Notes: generated by a model from the letters alone, not told the origin. Numbered from the stretch's first letter, positions 13,681 through 61,400 are shown. The stretch is DNA of 64,000 bases from Fimbriosthenelais zetlandica (GCA_977030845.1 OZ365114.1:10912001-10976000); one strand, 5' to 3'. A program made the numbers and translations.

Positions 13681-14280
13681 CAAGTCACTCATTAGGTTAA
13701 TTTCCAAAGATAATGTTCCTATCCATGTTTGGTAGAAAAAGACAAGAACTTTGTGTCTCTACTGCTGTCCTAAACCAGAACTATTCTACTTTTCACTGCA
13801 TTTCAATGGGACACCTTTTCCCTCCCTTGGATATAGGAGGAGGCGAAACTACCAAGCATTTGACTAAACAATGCATTGACACCTTAACTGAGGCTTTATG
13901 GTATTAAATACCAACTCGAGCTAACTAGTCTCTAAACTATTTAATGTTTTCAGCAAATTGAAAGCCTTTACACAATAATACCAGTTCCTTAATATCAATC
14001 TGGCACCTGGTTGTATTGTGATCGCTTTTCAATTACTTGTTGACTGGCAGCCGCCACGCTTCTGAAAGCCAATCAATCCATTGACCTACCATGCATAACG
14101 AGGTCACATATTCCATGCTGGCTTGAATTACTGACTGGTTATACATATACTAACAACCCTGTACATATGCACTGATTAGTCAGAACACTGAATTCTTTGG
14201 TATAGCACCATTGGCATGCACGCCCCTGTATACAGTTATTTTCGCGAAAAGAAAATGTCACTTACGACCTTATGGCTCCC

Positions 14281-14570
14281 CTTGCTGTTCTCTTGCTGTT
14301 GCCACTCTCTCTTGCTCCTGCCACTCTGTCTTGCCGCTGCTGTCGCCCTCTCTTGTTCCTGCCACTCACTCTTGCTGCTGCTGTCGCCCTCTCTTGTTTC
14401 TGACACTCACTCTTGCTGCTGCTGTCGCCCTCTCTTGTTTCTGACACTCACTCTTGCTGCTGCTGTCGCCCTCTCTTGTTCCTGCAACTCACTCTTGCTG
14501 CTGCTGTCGCCCTCTCTTGCTGCTGCCACTTTCTCTTGCTGCTGCCCTCTCGTACTGCTGCTGCTGCTGA
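14281..14570. repeat. 41-bp minisatellite (two ~20-bp CTCTTG subunits)
   Basis: About 4-5 near-identical copies of CTCTTGCTGCTGCTGTCGCCCTCTCTTGTT(T/C)CTG(A/C)CACTCA with degenerate monomeric flanks. Confidence 0.9.
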
Positions 14571-14649
14571 AAATTCGCTAAACCATGTCGAAGAACCAGA
14601 AAACCAATTTGTGCACCTGATAATTATTAGTTAAAAGTGCTAAAAGGGA

Positions 14650-14727
14650 GAAAGCATAGTCCCAAAGGGGATTCGGAAAGCATAGGCCCATAGGGGATTC
14701 GGAAAGCATAGTCCCAAAGGGGATTCG
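14650..14727. repeat. 26-bp tandem repeat x3
   Basis: GAAAGCATAGTCCCAAAGGGGATTCG at 14650, 14676 (2 substitutions) and 14702. Confidence 0.9.
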
Positions 14728-15270: not shown

Positions 15271-15297
15271 ATTCACACTGTCTTTTCATTTTTGCAG
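15271..15297 (+). promoter_or_regulatory. Putative splice acceptor upstream of the 282-aa CDS (intron in 5' UTR)
   Basis: TTCAC branch-like motif, pyrimidine tract ctgtcttttcatttttgCAG ending at 15297; 54 nt of leader before the ATG. Confidence 0.6.
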
Positions 15298-15351
15298 ATA
15301 TTTGATATTTAAATCAATTGAGTGGCGGAATAAGCAGTAGCGTATATAGCC

Positions 15352-16200
15352 ATGGTCAACGATACAGTACATCTCATCTTGGTGGCTTTAGGCGCCGCTG
15401 CAGGCCTAGCCATCATAATCTTCATTGTAGCCTGCATCTGTATCGGACTATGTGGGAGAGCGCCCATGGCGCGACAAGGAGCCCTATGGTCCGAATCAGA
15501 AGAGAACACCAAAGTCTGCTGCTGGATGCAATGCACAGATGGCTGGTTTGGGAAAAAGAAACCCAGACTTTCTGAAGATGAGGGGAGAGGGGACAGAAGG
15601 GGTTCTAGTACCAGGAGAGGAAGCCGGGAGAGGAGAGATAGTGAAGGAGATAGGAGGGGGAGCAACGCAGGTCGACGAGAAAGCAACGCCGACCGCAAAG
15701 CCAGCAACGCCGGGAGGAAAGAAAGCAATGCAGGACGACGAGGAAGTCATTCAGCAAGAAGAGAAAGTAACGCTGACAGAAAAGAAAGCAACGCTGGAAG
15801 GAGGGAAAGCAACGCAGCAAAGAAAGAAGATCGGAAAGAAAGCAATGCAGGGCGACGAGAAAGTAATGCGGATCGAAGAGAAAGCAACGCGGGGAGGAGA
15901 GAAAGCGCTGCTGGCAGAAGAGAAAGCAACGCAGATCGCCGTGGGAGTAACGCGGGGAGGAAAGAAAGCAACGCTGACAGGAGAGAAAGGCTTGACAGTA
16001 GCAGTGGTAGGAAGTACAGCAGCAGCAGCTGGGTGGAGTCGCCGACTGCTCGACGAAGAGAGAGTGACGCGGGCAGAACCTTGTATGAGACGAATGCTGG
16101 CCACAAGAGAAAGATGCTAGCGGAAGAGGAAGTTAACATTCTCATAACAGATGACGATACTTTTTTGAATAATGTGCCTCATAAAATTATACAGATTTAG
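15352..16200 (+). CDS. Uncharacterised single-pass (signal-anchor) membrane protein with cytosolic R-[RK]-x-S heptad repeat array, 282 aa
   Basis: 849-bp ORF; GCCATGG start context; in-frame TAA upstream (15310-15312); hydrophobic segment aa ~8-33 (LILVALGAAAGLAIIIFIVACICIGL); 15 heptads [GDA]R[RK]xS[NHA][AS] at aa 100-208 with synonymous codon variation but conserved residues; upstream splice acceptor and downstream AATAAA. Confidence 0.82.
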   Translation: MVNDTVHLILVALGAAAGLAIIIFIVACICIGLCGRAPMARQGALWSESEENTKVCCWMQCTDGWFGKKKPRLSEDEGRGDRRGSSTRRGSRERRDSEGDRRGSNAGRRESNADRKASNAGRKESNAGRRGSHSARRESNADRKESNAGRRESNAAKKEDRKESNAGRRESNADRRESNAGRRESAAGRRESNADRRGSNAGRKESNADRRERLDSSSGRKYSSSSWVESPTARRRESDAGRTLYETNAGHKRKMLAEEEVNILITDDDTFLNNVPHKIIQI

Positions 16201-16214
16201 CATGACATTGCACA

Positions 16215-16220
16215 AATAAA
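16215..16220 (+). terminator. Candidate polyadenylation signal of the 282-aa gene
   Basis: AATAAA starting 15 nt after the stop codon; further AATAAA hexamers lie downstream, so usage is uncertain. Confidence 0.35.
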
Positions 16221-50203: not shown

Positions 50204-50817
50204 TTTACCTATATGTCAATTGTTCTCTTTTTGCGATTGGTTTGCAGATTATAGCAGTTGAGGACTTTTCCACAATTCAAGAGGCAAAATTACTATCCTA
50301 GCAAAAAGGAAAGTTTATTATTCGACATTGCAGAGGAAATTTACAGCAACATCCAAGAGGAAACAGGCTATCATTTCTTAGACCTGCTCTTCTCGGTTGG
50401 CAGCAATGGATCTTTTACGACATTCTGCCCTTCAACACAGATGGTAGTAAATACAACGGAAATTGGGAGAAAAAAAAAAATGTGAGGTGTGGGAGGAATT
50501 TGACAAATTTGTAAAGATTTGTGCACCAGATGCCTGCAGGACTTGGTTGGACCCATGCAGGGAAACAAAATACTTTAGAAGTAGAAAGCAAATACATACT
50601 TGTATTCATATCCAACAAAAGTCTCAAATATCACCGGACAAAAATGAGGATGCACTTTTTGAACAAAATCTTCCCACGTCCTCGAGTCAATTATCATCTG
50701 TTGTCCAACATGATACATGATAGGTACAACTTTTTAAAAAGTGCAAAAAACAAGTGCTCGGATTGCTCACCTTGTTGCCACTATTCCCCTGAGGAGGGAA
50801 TAGTGGCAACAAGGGGA

Positions 50818-50820
<3 letters not shown>

Positions 50821-50874
<54 letters not shown>
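50821..50874. repeat. (AG)27 microsatellite
   Basis: Perfect dinucleotide run. Confidence 0.97.
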
Positions 50875-50877
<3 letters not shown>

Positions 50878-51683
50878 AAGGGAGAAGGACTGAGAGCGGG
50901 AGAGAGGATGACTGTTTTATTTTTTATTGTCCATCGTTCGTGTTTTCGTCAGCGTATATTGGATGTGTATGTACATAAGGTGGCCTAGATTCAGGACACA
51001 GCCCGGTGACATGTCAGCCAAATCACATAGATGTAAAGCCAAGAAATAAAACACAAAAAATACTCGACAACATATGGGAGAGGAGGAAGAGAGGGAGGAC
51101 CCAAGGGCTAATGTACTGAGACATGGGGCGGGAGTCGTAGATGAAATAAATCGTACAGAGGAAAGGGTGTAGAAAGGGTGGAGAAAATGGAGGAGAAAGG
51201 ATGAACAAAATGGAGGGGAAAAGGGTGGAGGAAATGGAGATCAAGACCAAATGGAAGGTAAAGAGTAAGGGAAAGATCTCGGGAAGTGAAGCGAAGGAAG
51301 AATGGAATGCTTTAAATATAACTTTTAAAAATAGTTTAACATTATTTCAACATTCAGTTAAGGTAATAAAACAAACACTATAGATGTATTCTATGACTCT
51401 GTGGCCCATAAATGCCTTATATTCGTTTCAAGGAAGATACTAGATGTCTTAAATCTGTTGTGTATGACAGACATTCAAGGATGAGAGAAGGGATGTATTA
51501 TGGAGGAGGGAAGTTGGATTTAAAATCTCCAGTCATCAAATGATCTTAATGCACAACACTGACAGCAAGCTTCCATATATCAAAGTCTACATGATAATAT
51601 CAAACGTATAGAAATTATAGTCGCTAGATTAAATGGCCTGGACCCACTAGGCCGATTTTCCACCCAAAGACAGTTAATAAAAT

Positions 51684-57522: not shown

Positions 57523-58355
57523 ATATAGGAGTGGGATCCATCACTGTTTGACACTGTAGGGTGTATGGGTATGTGAGGTGTATATATTATGTATGTGAGG
57601 GGGGTGGTAACACGCTATATGGGCTATATAATACCCGTTTACTGACCAGTATTTGGGTTTACAGGCTTCCCTTCCGTAACCAGGCCCTTCATAGACTTGC
57701 TAAGTTCTGGGGTAATTTTTCTATTAAATGGAAGAGGCCCCAGATGAATTCAATGAACAGTTGCTCTTCTCAAAGGGCAGTGATGGGTTATATGACTTCT
57801 TTAGACACATGGCTGGCCTTCGATATCTCAGTACAAAATGCACTAAGAACAAAGTATTTTGTCCACATCCTCGGGGTATAGGCATGTCTAGCCTTTAGGT
57901 TTGTGAGGGCAAGGAGGTTAAAAGGTGGCATTAATGTATATTTGGGATTTAGGGTTACAATACTCGGGTCGCAATCCAAATATCACAGCTTTAATGTTAG
58001 GCTAGAACTGCGCAGTAGGGGGGATTTATTTTCTGCGCTCATTTCGAAAAGATCGGAATCTTTGAAGGAATTGATCATTAAGAATGACTTACCAGTTGGA
58101 AGATTTTTAGATTGAAGAGGCGAAATTAATCTTCTATGGTAAAATCCAGAGATCTGAAAGAGATAGAGATGAATTATTGAGGTGTACTCAGTGAATAAAG
58201 AAAGTAAAATGGGTGCTGACAGATAGGGACAGGGAGGGAAGACAGATGTGGTCTCAACAAGACGCTTATCTAACGGGTGGTTGAATAATACAATATCGAC
58301 AATCTGACTCAGTGATTTCCCGTTATTGGTAATTAATTTAAACAAAACGTAATTT

Positions 58356-58435
58356 GGATGGATGGATGAATGGATGGGTGGATGGATAAATGAATGAATG
58401 AATGAATGAATGAATGAATGAATGAACGAACGAAC
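58356..58435. repeat. Compound microsatellite (GGAT)n-(GAAT)n-(GAAC)n
   Basis: Direct reading. Confidence 0.95.
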
Positions 58436-61400
58436 GCCATTGTAGTAGTTAAAGTGATTTGGGATAGCTCGAGAGTGGGAGTGAGAGAGAGTGGGATAGG
58501 CCCTACGTATAGAGAAAGAGAGGGAGAGAGAGACCTGAACAGATACAGAATATGTTCTTTCCCATGTTATGACAGCTTCAGGAGATGCCCCATTATCCTC
58601 CTCACATCTGCTGCTCTTTTTCCATTGGTGAAACAACCATCTTACCTTTTCTATCTTAGTAAAACGAGCCTGCAGACCAGCCCCCGACCCCCCGCCCAAC
58701 CCCCCACCCTGCCAGCCCCGGGCCCCAATCCAATACACACTAAAACTCCAGCCCTGGGCCACAACCCAAAACATGAGGTTCCCATCAAAAACTCATACAG
58801 CACCAAAATAAAAACACAAAGAAAGAATTACCAAAAATACCCTTACAACCCAATAAAAAATCATATGATAATTTGTTACCGACGGTGAACAAAGGAGTTG
58901 GTTGAAAGCACAAGACCAATGAATGATTTTGTACATGGAAATACGATGGCAGTGAAACATAAATTGTTTGTTTTTTCTCATGGTTTCTGTGGGTCAGACA
59001 TGTGTTTTGGGGGTAGTGAGATGGAGGTGGGAGCCACGTGTGGTGGAAGACTGAGGTACTAAATGGTCACGTGGTTTGTTATGATTGTGACGTCATAATG
59101 ACTCAGGTAAGGGACCGGATGTGATCCAGACTCACTCCTTGAGTTGCTCTTCCCCAACTCACCAAGTCAGGAAAGGCGATTTGTCTCAATTAAAAACAGT
59201 AGTAGCTTTGGGGTAGGTTTAAGGTCAAGTCAGAAGTCTTATTAAAGTTTTAATCATAATTTTTGGGGTTATCTTGCGTGGGGCATCACAAAAATAGAAA
59301 GTCTGACTTAGAGGCCTACTTTACTACTACTGTAGCTATATTTGTCTTTGCATGGAGGCATCACACAATATAGTTCTACTCCCCGATAATCTGAATTTGT
59401 CCTTTACTTAAAAGGTAAAGGTTGATTTTCTCGTATTTTGTGTGGGAGAGGGCGGGGGTATCAGGAAAATAGTTAATGCTGCCATCTGAATTTCTCCTTT
59501 AAGCCCAGGGTAATTTTACCTTACATTTATCTGACTTTCCCCATCATGCCTAGATCTGTAAGGAATAAACCCACTTTCAAATACATGCAAACACATTTTT
59601 CATTACAATAATCCATAATCCATAATTTTTTCTACCAAAAGCAACATCTCTTGAGCAGCAGACATCTTATAGGTACTTTACTTTGAGATTTGACTTGCAC
59701 CATTTGGCCCTGATCTGTATACGAAATGGGAAATCATGTCTTAAAAAACTTTTTTTCTGCCGAGTCCTCTCAGACTTAGTCAGACTGGCCTGGGTGTGAG
59801 GAGGTAGGAGGCTGGCTAGTTTTCTGGGTCGTGGCACCTGGTCCTGGTTAGACCAGACCCAGGGGTCTCATGTCTAATACCAACTATAGATCTCCAGCAC
59901 AATGTGGGCACTGACATTTATAGATCCTCAGCCTGAAGTAATAGCATACTTTACAGGGCCGGATTCCAGGGCATCGGACAAAGCATTGATAGGCATCGGT
60001 CAAAAAATGGTAAAAAAAAAAAAATAATAATTTTTCATGAAGAGGTCTCTGCATTGCAAAGAGAGGGAACCTGCCGCATTTGCCGCAAAGTTGTGCCTCT
60101 CACTGGGAAATTTATCGCAAAGGGCTGGTCCTAAGACAAATTACAGTACTCATTTTTTGCTTAGATTTAAATCCTTAATTATTAGGTTCCGATACTGAAG
60201 CTATTCACTCCATATGGTGTAATCCCATATGGATGAAGACGACAGACGAGTTAGCATTTTTTGTAGCGACAAACGGATTGTTTGGATTGAAATCAATGTC
60301 AATATTCCATTTCATTATGACGACGCCCCGGGGCGGCCATTTGTGGAACTTTGAAGTGGGCAGACGCTGTTTGCATAATTAATGAGGGCCAGGTTGTGGG
60401 TCAGTGACGTCACACACCTGGTTCAACCTGGCGTCCCTATCCCAGGTCACAGACTGTTTTCTAGATTTCAATCTCTTTTTTGTTTAATGAAAAAATGCTT
60501 TACTTGTGCCAAATCGTTGATAAACAGCAATCATTGGACTTGTTTTTAGAGATCATCTTTAATTCATATCTCTTGTAGTAATTTTCAAAGAGAAGAATGA
60601 ATAATTTCAGAGAAGTGAATGATATAACTTATTTAGAAGGAACAGTTTCAAAAATCTCTGAACAAGGAAGGAAAGGTGGAAAAATGGGACCAATATAAAT
60701 ATTTTGTGAACAGTTTGTGGGAAATTCACTGAGAAAGGACGAAAAATATCCACAAAAGTAAGATGTAGAAAGAGACAAGGCACTGGAAACACCAAATATT
60801 TTACAATGATGACTTTATCAAAGAAAATTCCTGCGGACAAAACATAATCAGGAAATCAAATAAAACCCATTTCCTGACTACACTATACTTTAAACACTCC
60901 ACAAAGAAATACCTTCTTGCAAAATAAAGATAGCAAAAGGTCGATTTTAGATAAATGATCAAATTCACTGCTTGATAAACAGCAGGTAGATGACATGAAA
61001 GACTAGCTAGGTTTAACTATTGGAAGCACGTCTTCATACAAAGAGACTGTACCAGGAAAAATACACACCTATATCACTACAAGATCAAAGACTCTCCAGA
61101 TATGTTTACATAACTGGTTTTTTTACTTTTGTTTTTTATAGTGGTTAGAGACAGGTCCATATGTGATTCCACGAAGTATGATTGTGTTGGAGCAGCGCAC
61201 GTGGCCGAGGACCGAGACATTGTTTTCAGAGGGAGTGATCCCAGAGTGACGGTTGTTTGGGTGGGGTGGACGTCCGCGGTTGGGAAAAATATTAAGTAAA
61301 AAAGTTTTGCAAGGGATAAAAGTTTGGAGTGAATAAGTGGGACTTTTCAGCTATTTCAGGACGAGAAAGGAAAACGCTGTCGGCATATATTTTCCTGAGC

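What the first reader, a model, noticed from the sequence alone, without database searches (positions are those of the whole stretch)
15595..16065. Orphan membrane protein with a 20-site R-[RK]-x-S array: candidate cAMP/PKA phosphorylation rheostat
Seen: aa 82-238 of the 282-aa ORF contain 20 R-[RK]-x-S motifs (RRES, RKES, RRGS, RRDS, RKAS, RKYS). Fifteen of them sit in a 7-aa register (aa 100-208), often alternating GRRESNA/DRKESNA. Established: R-[RK]-x-S is the PKA consensus, also used by PKG and Aurora kinases; the CFTR R domain is a known multisite PKA region. Inference: each heptad is net 0 to +1 unphosphorylated and -1 to -2 phosphorylated. The disordered tail could therefore act as a graded electrostatic switch, a phosphate sink or a PKA decoy at the membrane. 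I recognise no described family with this design.
Basis: partly seen in the sequence, partly recalled or inferred. Interest (0 to 1): 0.88.

Follow-up and report, generated by a model that had tools for sequence, protein, structure and literature searches.

The report
Membrane protein with repeated kinase sites
An unannotated 282-residue gene in an invertebrate genome encodes a small membrane-anchored protein whose tail repeats a protein-kinase-A-type target motif 20 times; the codons show that selection has preserved the motif, but no relative, transcript or phosphorylation data could be found.

Summary
ORF 15352-16200(+) encodes 282 aa with one N-terminal hydrophobic anchor (aa 8-35). Residues 82-238 carry exactly 20 R-[RK]-x-S motifs, against 2.1 +/- 1.3 in composition-matched shuffles. 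Fifteen motifs lie in 21-bp units, in two sub-arrays separated by a 4-aa insertion.

The array is not a young minisatellite. Units are 68% identical in DNA and 73% in protein. Synonymous sites are near saturation (pS 0.91, pN 0.16, ratio 0.18), while the other frames give 0.39-2.1. All 15 units keep R-[RK]-x-S, against 2.7 expected under random mutation. So this frame has been under protein-level purifying selection.

No homologue was found in about 15 billion proteins, Pfam, PDB, JGI metagenomes or three relatives' contigs. The source species is absent from those databases, and no sequencing run was listed, so expression is untested.

Seven units read R-[RK]-x-S-N-A-G, the context of VASP Ser157, a documented PKA/PKG substrate. 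My best reading (about 0.45) is a membrane-anchored cytosolic tail that a PKA/PKG-type kinase phosphorylates at many sites, swinging its charge from +21 to about -19. The kinase, the topology and the supposed disorder remain inferred; AF2 predicted a long helix. I rate it an orphan, a new variant of multisite phospho-regulated tails, of moderate interest.

The parts
15291..15298 (+). Possible 3' splice acceptor (ttttgcag) ending a 5'-UTR intron, 53 nt before the start codon
   Evidence: Read directly from the sequence: a pyrimidine tract plus CAG. In-frame TAA at 15331-15333, so no upstream coding exon can join in this frame through this acceptor. Inference only; no RNA data.
15352..16200 (+). 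Complete 282-aa coding ORF (ATG in GCCATGG context, stop TAG 16198-16200)
   Evidence: It is the second-longest ORF in the 64-kb window. The frame is confirmed by the codon-level selection signature.
15373..15456 (+). Single hydrophobic membrane anchor, aa 8-35 (LILVALGAAAGLAIIIFIVACICIGLCG), preceded by only 7 residues
   Evidence: Kyte-Doolittle 19-residue maximum is 3.0 at aa 8; no other window in the protein exceeds 0.1. AF2 predicts a helix at 2-35. At 28 residues it is too long for the h-region of a cleavable signal peptide (established rule, inference).
15514..15534 (+). Juxtamembrane Cys cluster CCWMQC (aa 55-60), followed by KKK (aa 68-70); candidate palmitoylation/polybasic patch
   Evidence: Sequence. 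The function is inferred by analogy with palmitoylated transmembrane adaptors.
15595..16065 (+). Region with 20 R-[RK]-x-S motifs (aa 82-238), net charge +21
15649..15975 (+). Core array: 15 in-register 21-bp units encoding [GD]-R-[RK]-[EG]-S-N-A (aa 100-208)
   Evidence: pS 0.91, pN 0.16; 15/15 units keep the motif.
15817..15828 (+). 12-bp (AKKE) insertion that splits the array into two registers
   Evidence: Spacing of 11 between sites 150 and 161.
16129..16146 (+). EVNILI (aa 260-265), which fits the [DE]xxxL[LI] acidic dileucine sorting signal
   Evidence: Regex match. It is a short motif, so weak evidence; it is meaningful only if the tail is cytosolic.
16215..16220 (+). AATAAA, possible polyadenylation signal 15 nt after the stop
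   Evidence: Read from the sequence; inference.

Best explanation
This is a real, lineage-restricted protein-coding gene, probably with one coding exon after a 5'-UTR intron. It encodes a small single-pass membrane protein. Seven residues lie outside, a 28-residue anchor spans the membrane, and about 247 residues face the cytosol, with Cys-rich and polybasic stretches next to the membrane. The tail is built around an old tandem array of [GD]-R-[RK]-E-S-N-A heptads. I propose that each heptad is a phospho-acceptor site for a Ser-preferring basophilic kinase that needs Arg at -3 and Arg/Lys at -2. That means PKA or PKG type, since the context is that of VASP Ser157. Unphosphorylated, the array is net +21 and would lie on the acidic inner leaflet or bind other polyanions. 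Stepwise phosphorylation of up to 20 Ser takes it to about -19, releasing it or creating many phospho-Ser docking sites. It would thus act as a graded, high-capacity electrostatic or adaptor switch, a Ser/PKA counterpart of LAT-type transmembrane adaptors or the MARCKS effector domain.

Shown: the ORF, the motif count, the anchor, and protein-level purifying selection on the repeat. Inferred: expression, topology, phosphorylation, kinase identity and output.
For: (1) Coding and selected. Among the 15 units pS is 0.91 and pN 0.16 (ratio 0.18) in the ORF frame. The other sense frames give 2.1 and 1.1, and the antisense frames give 1.96, 1.24 and 0.39. A random-mutation null never falls below 0.53. 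All 15 units keep R-[RK]-x-S against 2.7 expected, maximum 7. Arg codons switch between AGR and CGN; Ser is always AGY, Asn AAY, Asp GAY and never GAR. Two 117-bp blocks inside the array give pS 0.54 and pN 0.11.
(2) The invariant positions are exactly the kinase determinants: R(-3) 20/20, R/K(-2) 20/20 (RR 14, RK 6, never KR or KK), S 20/20, never T. Positions -1, +1 and +2 vary. The five degenerate flanking copies keep R-[RK]-x-S but lose N-A.
(3) The R-R-x-S-N-A-G context is that of VASP Ser157. Its peptide EHIERRVSNAGGP is phosphorylated by PKA and by PKGI/II (PMC7865299).
(4) Architecture. There is one strong N-terminal anchor and no second hydrophobic segment. The N-flank is short and acidic, and R36 and R41 follow the anchor. 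There is a CC/Cys cluster, and EVNILI fits a dileucine signal. The nearest language-model look-alikes are small N-terminal-anchor proteins with cytosolic tails (SMIM36, stannin, TMEM52, FAM163, LIME1), at weak scores of about 0.8.
(5) The ORF is intact and is one of only two ORFs of 280 aa or more in 64 kb.
Against: There is no transcript evidence: no runs were listed, and the exact protein is not on record. No orthologue was found, although the array looks old. It is also absent within 10-19 kb of the neighbour's orthologue in three relatives' contigs. Those relatives are distant, however (about 72-75% nt identity in the neighbouring coding sequence), and the source species itself is missing from the databases.

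The whole heptad is conserved, including E(-1), N(+1) and A(+2), not only the kinase determinants. Something beyond a minimal PKA consensus is therefore selected. PKA usually prefers a hydrophobic +1 residue, whereas here it is Asn. Topology is inferred; the flanking-charge difference is only 0 to +1. AF2 predicts a long confident helix rather than disorder.
Confidence: 0.45

Rival explanations
1. The repeat is a structural or binding module rather than a kinase target. It would be a membrane-anchored polybasic/polyampholyte rod or brush that binds polyanions (RNA/ribosomes, acidic lipids, tubulin tails) or acts as a spacer. This resembles the basic decapeptide repeats behind the N-terminal anchor of ribosome-binding protein p180/RRBP1. 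Ser would be kept for solubility or packing.
For: All seven heptad positions are conserved, not only R-R-x-S. The array is net +21 with 46% charged residues. AF2 draws aa 101-217 as a single helix with pLDDT up to 92. The architecture of an N-terminal anchor plus basic tandem repeats is the same as p180 (established knowledge).
Against: Polyanion binding does not predict an invariant Arg at -3 with R/K allowed only at -2, nor Ser never replaced by Thr, Ala or Asn in 20 copies. The heptad has no hydrophobic a/d seam and no opposite charges at i/i+3 or i/i+4. Gly, Ser and Asn are poor helix formers, so the helix is doubtful. There is no Pfam match to the p180 repeat region.
Confidence: 0.2
2. 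It is a secretory or type II precursor cut at the dibasic pairs into many tiny peptides, analogous to TRH precursors. RR-ESNAG-RR would give pGlu-Ser-Asn-Ala-amide, and the D-units would give ESNAD.
For: There are 20+ dibasic pairs. Gly precedes the pair in 8 of 15 units, which is the amidation signal. The N-terminal Glu could cyclise. The N-terminus is hydrophobic. Tandem short peptides between dibasic sites are the classical neuropeptide-precursor design (established knowledge).
Against: The hydrophobic segment is 28 residues long with no positive n-region, so it is an anchor and not a cleavable signal. Length and flanking charges favour a cytosolic tail. The pairs are RR (14) and RK (6), never KR, which is the convertases' preferred pair. 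Gly is present in only about half the units. The products would be 4-5 polar residues with no aromatic or hydrophobic residue. No spacer peptides exist. The dileucine motif makes sense only in the cytosol.
Confidence: 0.08
3. It is not a functioning gene today: a formerly coding but now silent relic, or an exon wrongly read as a stand-alone ORF.
For: No transcript, no annotation and no orthologue were found. The purine-rich repeat is open in several frames. A codon-usage test of the non-repeat parts was uninformative.
Against: The ORF is intact over 282 codons, including 81 and 44 non-repeat codons on either side, in AT-rich DNA. The start context is good, with an in-frame stop upstream. The selection signature is strong and frame-specific. 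The missing database hits are explained by the absence of the source species, since the neighbouring gene has no 100% hit either.
Confidence: 0.12

Closest known systems
VASP Ser157 site (E-R-R-V-S-N-A-G-G), a PKA/PKG phospho-site
   Same: The local context R-R-x-S-N-A-G is identical at -3, -2, 0, +1, +2 and +3 in three of the window's units (with RK at -2 in four more). The VASP peptide is a substrate for PKA and PKGI/II (PMC7865299).
   Different: VASP has one such site, in an EVH1/proline-rich actin regulator. Here the site is repeated about 15-20 times on a membrane anchor, with Glu or Gly instead of Val at -1. There is no sequence homology beyond the motif.
CFTR R domain (multisite PKA-regulated region)
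   Same: Many R-[RK]-x-S sites lie in one cytosolic segment of a membrane protein, and phosphorylation there is graded. CFTR has more than 10 sites (PMC11573500 abstract).
   Different: The CFTR sites are dispersed and non-repetitive, and they regulate an attached ABC channel. Here the sites form a tandem heptad array on a protein with no other domain. No homology.
LAT/PAG/LIME-type transmembrane adaptor proteins
   Same: Very short ectodomain, one TM helix, juxtamembrane Cys, and a long domain-free cytosolic tail that is a string of kinase sites. LIME1 is among the weak language-model look-alikes.
   Different: Those tails carry Tyr motifs for Src/Syk kinases and SH2 docking. Here the sites are Ser in a basophilic consensus and are tandemly repeated. 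No homology.
MARCKS effector domain and other polybasic electrostatic switches
   Same: A basic segment held at the membrane whose charge is reversed by Ser phosphorylation. This is the proposed mode of action.
   Different: MARCKS has 25 residues, 3-4 PKC sites and a myristoyl anchor. Here there are 157 residues, 20 sites and a transmembrane anchor.
RNA polymerase II CTD and other tandem heptad phospho-arrays
   Same: A tandem 7-residue repeat whose units are each kinase targets, with old units conserved at the protein level.
   Different: The CTD consensus YSPTSPS is targeted by proline-directed or CDK-type kinases in a nuclear enzyme subunit. The sequences are unrelated.
Phospholamban / phospholemman (small single-pass PKA-regulated membrane proteins)
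   Same: A small single-pass protein with R-R-x-S in the cytosolic part.
   Different: They have one or two sites and defined partner pumps. The FXYD and phospholamban families are not matched in Pfam. Phospholamban's anchor is C-terminal.
P0001, a kinase-domain protein with a [GD]-K-R-E-S-Q-S heptad array (unlabelled ENA contig)
   Same: Best phmmer hit (E 6e-31). It is a 7-aa repeat with basic-basic-E-S and G/D alternation.
   Different: Its 21-bp units are nearly identical in DNA, so the expansion is young. The codons differ, and there is no similarity outside the repeat. It is convergent low complexity, not a relative.

Membership tests
PKA/PKG-type (basophilic AGC kinase) substrate | Consensus R-[RK]-x-S/T at the acceptor | tested here: met
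   20 matches. R at -3 in 20/20, R/K at -2 in 20/20, Ser in 20/20. Seven units share the full VASP-Ser157 context.
PKA/PKG-type (basophilic AGC kinase) substrate | Hydrophobic residue at +1 (PKA preference) | tested here: not met
   +1 is Asn in 13/20 and never hydrophobic. The VASP Ser157 site also has Asn at +1 and is still a good substrate, so this is not disqualifying.
PKA/PKG-type (basophilic AGC kinase) substrate | Site accessible in the cytosol and actually phosphorylated | not testable with these tools
   Topology is inferred from sequence only. No phosphoproteome or RNA data could be reached.
Neuropeptide / prohormone precursor | Cleavable N-terminal signal peptide (h-region about 7-15 residues, small residues at -1/-3) | tested here: not met
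   The uninterrupted hydrophobic stretch is 28 residues long, with an acidic n-region. Judged by rule of thumb; no SignalP was available.
Neuropeptide / prohormone precursor | Repeated peptide flanked by KR/RR sites, with an invariant Gly donor if amidated | tested here: inconclusive
   Dibasic pairs are present, but they are RR/RK and never KR. Gly occurs in only 8/15 units.
Coiled coil / charged single alpha-helix | Hydrophobic a/d positions, or E/K/R pairs at i/i+4 | tested here: not met
   The heptad G/D-R-R/K-E-S-N-A has no hydrophobic position other than Ala and no opposite charges at i+3 or i+4. AF2 nevertheless predicts a helix.
FXYD (phospholemman) and phospholamban families | Match to the family profile (FXYD motif / phospholamban fold) | tested here: not met
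   Pfam scan at E up to 10 returned only a chance TMEM132_C hit (E 2.5).
SR / RS-domain proteins | RRM domain plus runs of RS/SR dipeptides | tested here: not met
   There is no RRM. Arg and Ser are separated by one residue and never form RS dipeptide runs. A membrane anchor is present.
RRBP1/p180-type ER ribosome receptor | N-terminal anchor, basic decapeptide repeats and a C-terminal coiled coil; profile match | tested here: not met
   The anchor and the basic repeats are analogous. But the period is 7, there is no coiled-coil domain, and there is no Pfam or phmmer match.

The most novel reading that the evidence does not exclude
A selection-maintained natural concatemer of about 20 VASP-Ser157-like PKA/PKG sites on a palmitoylated single-pass anchor would work as a high-capacity, graded cyclic-nucleotide-driven device at the membrane. 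It could be an electrostatic switch (+21 to -19) or a local substrate buffer that shapes kinase and phosphatase availability. This design has not been described for any protein family.
Probability: 0.25. Interest if true: 0.75.

Novelty: new variant of a known kind. Interest (0 to 1): 0.5.

Why it matters
If expressed and phosphorylated, this would be the first tandem-repeat array of basophilic-kinase sites on a minimal membrane anchor. That would make it a natural test bed for how the number of phospho-sites converts kinase activity into graded or switch-like output at a membrane. It would also be a possible local buffer of PKA/PKG signalling. The case further shows that an orphan ORF can be validated from a single genome, by reading selection from the codon pattern among its own repeat units.

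Tried and rejected
Homology searches, all negative:
- Whole-protein word-indexed search: none.
- N-terminal 81 aa alone: none, even at E 10.
- Exhaustive phmmer against 1.84 billion representatives: 77 hits, all confined to the repeat and to unrelated repeat proteins, several plainly translated minisatellites.
- Pfam: only a chance hit.
- PDB: none.
- JGI metagenome scan: none.
- Exact-sequence look-up: not on record.

RNA evidence: two run searches listed nothing, so read laying could not be used.

Synteny: I fetched contigs of three relatives through the neighbouring MESR3-like gene and walked 10 kb further (L001, L003, L004). No RRxS ORF appeared, and nothing was conserved apart from the neighbour itself.

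Taxon: cluster look-up gave no names and Rfam gave nothing.

P0001 as a possible relative: rejected, because its repeat is young and uses different codons.

Codon-usage likelihood trained on the neighbouring gene: it did not discriminate between frames in the non-repeat parts.

Literature: the literal heptad strings returned only irrelevant acronyms. Searches for tandem or heptapeptide PKA-site arrays found no described family.

Other ORFs in the window scanned in Pfam: nothing.

Full report
**What is there.** The window is AT-rich eukaryotic DNA (GC about 0.33-0.48). ORF 15352..16200 on the + strand encodes 282 aa. Its ATG sits in a GCCATGG context, with an in-frame TAA at 15331-15333. A pyrimidine tract plus CAG ends at 15298, which looks like the acceptor of a 5'-UTR intron. 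An AATAAA lies 15 nt after the TAG stop. These gene-model features are read from the sequence and remain inferences. Only this ORF and the neighbouring 751-aa ORF reach 280 aa in the 64 kb.

**The observation.**
- This stretch holds 20 R-[RK]-x-S motifs and no additional [RK][RK]x[ST] site. Every acceptor is therefore Ser and every -3 residue is Arg.
- Shuffling the same residues gives 2.1 +/- 1.3 motifs, maximum 8 in 10,000 trials.
- No other place in the six-frame translation of the window has even 5 motifs per 150 aa.
- Fifteen motifs lie in 21-bp units (aa 100-208). The units form two sub-arrays, split by a 12-bp insertion encoding AKKE at aa 156-159. TRF also finds 42-, 63- and 117-bp higher-order periods.
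- The segment is net +21 with 46% charged residues. It would be about -19 if all 20 Ser carried a phosphate.

**Is it a gene or a minisatellite?** This was the key test, and it could be made from the window alone.
- The 15 units are only 68% identical in DNA but 73% identical in protein.
- Variation is concentrated at third positions and at the synonymous first position of Arg codons. The first Arg is AGR eight times and CGN seven times. Pyrimidine third bases occur only with CGN.
- Ser is always AGY, Asn AAY and Ala GCN with all four bases. The G/D position is GGN or GAY and never GAR.
- Nei-Gojobori counting over all unit pairs gives pS 0.91 and pN 0.16, a ratio of 0.18, in the ORF frame. 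The other two sense frames give 2.1 and 1.1.
- The antisense frames give 1.96, 1.24 and 0.39. The last is the antisense frame that shares wobble positions, and it contains stops.
- A null model put each unit's observed number of differences from the consensus at random positions. It never gave a ratio below 0.53 in 2,000 trials. It preserved R-[RK]-x-S in 2.7 units on average, maximum 7, against 15 of 15 observed.
- The two 117-bp blocks that mark a later internal duplication show pS 0.54 and pN 0.11.

This confirms the independent first-stage note s1-228887 ('conserved at protein level but scrambled at synonymous sites'). The array is old and has evolved under purifying selection in this reading frame. 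The best database hit, P0001, makes a useful contrast. It carries a [GD]KRESQS heptad array whose 21-bp units are almost identical in DNA, which is a young expansion.

**Relatives.** None was found.
- Whole-protein and N-terminal word-indexed searches found nothing.
- An exhaustive phmmer against 1.84 billion representatives gave 77 hits. All are confined to the repeat and to unrelated repeat proteins.
- Pfam gave only a chance hit at E 2.5. PDB, a JGI metagenome scan and an exact look-up gave nothing.

This absence must be read with care. The neighbouring gene (21228..23483, -) has no hit above 80% identity either, so the source species is simply not in these collections. I fetched the neighbour's orthologous loci from three relatives (L001, its extension L003, and L004). 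They show 72-75% nucleotide identity in that gene, nothing alignable outside it, and no RRxS ORF within 3-19 kb. No sequencing run was listed for the stretch, so transcription could not be examined at all.

**Anatomy of the protein.**
- There is one very hydrophobic segment, aa 8-35, with a 19-residue Kyte-Doolittle maximum of 3.0. Nothing else exceeds 0.1.
- Twenty-eight uninterrupted apolar residues after a 7-residue acidic N-terminus, followed by R36 and R41, is the pattern of an N-out/C-in anchor. It is not that of a cleavable signal peptide or a type II anchor. This rests on established topology rules and is not proven here.
- The tail carries a CCWMQC cluster and KKK near the membrane.
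- Its C-terminal part contains EVNILI, which fits the [DE]xxxL[LI] sorting signal.
- Language-model look-alikes are small proteins with an N-terminal anchor and a cytosolic tail (SMIM36, stannin, TMEM52, FAM163, LIME1). All score about 0.8, which is only a lead.
- Single-sequence AlphaFold2 gives a helix for aa 2-35. Unexpectedly, it also gives one continuous helix for aa 101-217 with pLDDT up to 92. The heptad has no hydrophobic seam and no i/i+3 or i/i+4 opposite charges, and three of its seven residues are poor helix formers.

**Which mechanism?** Several features point to a basophilic, Ser-preferring kinase rather than to charge alone or to convertase cleavage.
- The only positions invariant in all copies are Arg(-3), Arg/Lys(-2) and Ser(0).
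- The basic pair is RR (14) or RK (6), never KR or KK. This asymmetry matches the dominant -3 Arg requirement of PKA-type kinases. It is the opposite of the KR preference of prohormone convertases.
- Ser is never Thr, although Thr is one mutation away from AGY.
- The five degenerate flanking copies keep R-[RK]-x-S while losing N-A.
- There is no Arg at -5 and no hydrophobic residue at -5. From general knowledge of kinase motifs, that argues against Akt/RSK/PIM-type and CaMKII/PKD/AMPK-type kinases.
- Seven units read R-[RK]-x-S-N-A-G, three of them with RR. This is the context of VASP Ser157. Its peptide EHIERRVSNAGGP is phosphorylated by PKGI/II and is a good PKA substrate on peptide arrays (PMC7865299). 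Asn at +1 is therefore compatible with these kinases.

My best reading is a membrane-anchored cytosolic array of PKA/PKG-type sites whose charge flips on phosphorylation. In architecture it is comparable to LAT-type adaptors, in electrostatics to the MARCKS effector domain, and in multiplicity to the CFTR R domain, which has more than 10 sites (PMC11573500). I put this at about 0.45. PKA specifically is perhaps 0.3.

**Rivals.**
- (a) A polyanion-binding or structural basic repeat, as in p180/RRBP1. It is favoured by the conservation of the whole heptad and by the AF2 helix. It is disfavoured by the position-specific R versus K pattern and by the invariance of Ser (0.2).
- (b) A precursor cut at dibasic pairs into pGlu-Ser-Asn-Ala-amide-like peptides, formally like TRH precursors. 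It is disfavoured by the anchor-like N-terminus, the RR/RK-only pairs, Gly in only 8 of 15 units and the absence of spacers (0.08).
- (c) A silent relic or a mis-modelled exon. It is disfavoured by the intact frame and the selection signature, but it cannot be excluded without RNA data (0.12).

**Novelty and verdict.** No described family fits, and literature searches for such arrays found none. The concept of a multisite phospho-regulated tail is known. What is unusual is the implementation: an old tandem heptad array of basophilic-kinase sites on a minimal anchor. I classify it as a new variant of a known kind. Interest is moderate at 0.5. The sequence evidence for a real, selected coding repeat is strong. 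Expression, topology, phosphorylation and function are all untested, and lineage-restricted repeat-tailed membrane proteins are common in invertebrate genomes.

Noticed in passing
window 21228-23483 (-): An intronless 751-aa ORF adjacent to the finding. Its C-terminal 250 aa has relatives at 80, 77 and 66% identity in unlabelled ENA/Logan assemblies and at 38% in the annelid Paralvinella. Its nearest atlas cluster is 'Misexpression suppressor of ras 3' (0.93; arthropod and rotifer clusters), followed by WH1/WASP clusters. It has no Pfam hit. This suggests a protostome-type genome rather than an echinoderm, and it overlaps first-stage note s1-228867 (WH1-basic-CRIB).
   Followed up: partly
window 14307-14545: A 41-bp tandem repeat (5.8 copies, 92% matches) rich in CTG. 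It creates spurious Leu/Cys-rich ORFs (14216-14581 and 14413-14634) about 0.8 kb upstream of the gene. A 26-bp repeat with 3 copies follows at 14650-14727.
   Followed up: no
L002:3001-6975 (protein P0001, ENA ERZ26167708): A 1324-aa single-ORF protein with a protein-kinase domain and about 24 nearly identical [GD]-K-R-E-S-Q-S heptads. This is a young 21-bp expansion that also creates basic-basic-E-S sites. It is convergent with the window's array and not related to it.
   Followed up: partly
window 15652-16002 (aa 101-217 of the ORF): AlphaFold2 without an alignment predicts the whole heptad array as one 117-residue helix with pLDDT up to 92. The sequence nevertheless has Gly/Ser/Asn in every heptad, no hydrophobic seam and no salt-bridge register. 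This is either a repeat artefact or a hint of conditional helicity.
   Followed up: no
window 50521-50988 (+) and 57983-58774 (-): Long ORFs produced by simple repeats: a (GA)n-type run read as RERERE..., and a 12-bp repeat read as FIHSFIHS.... Neither has a family match. They are probably non-coding.
   Followed up: no
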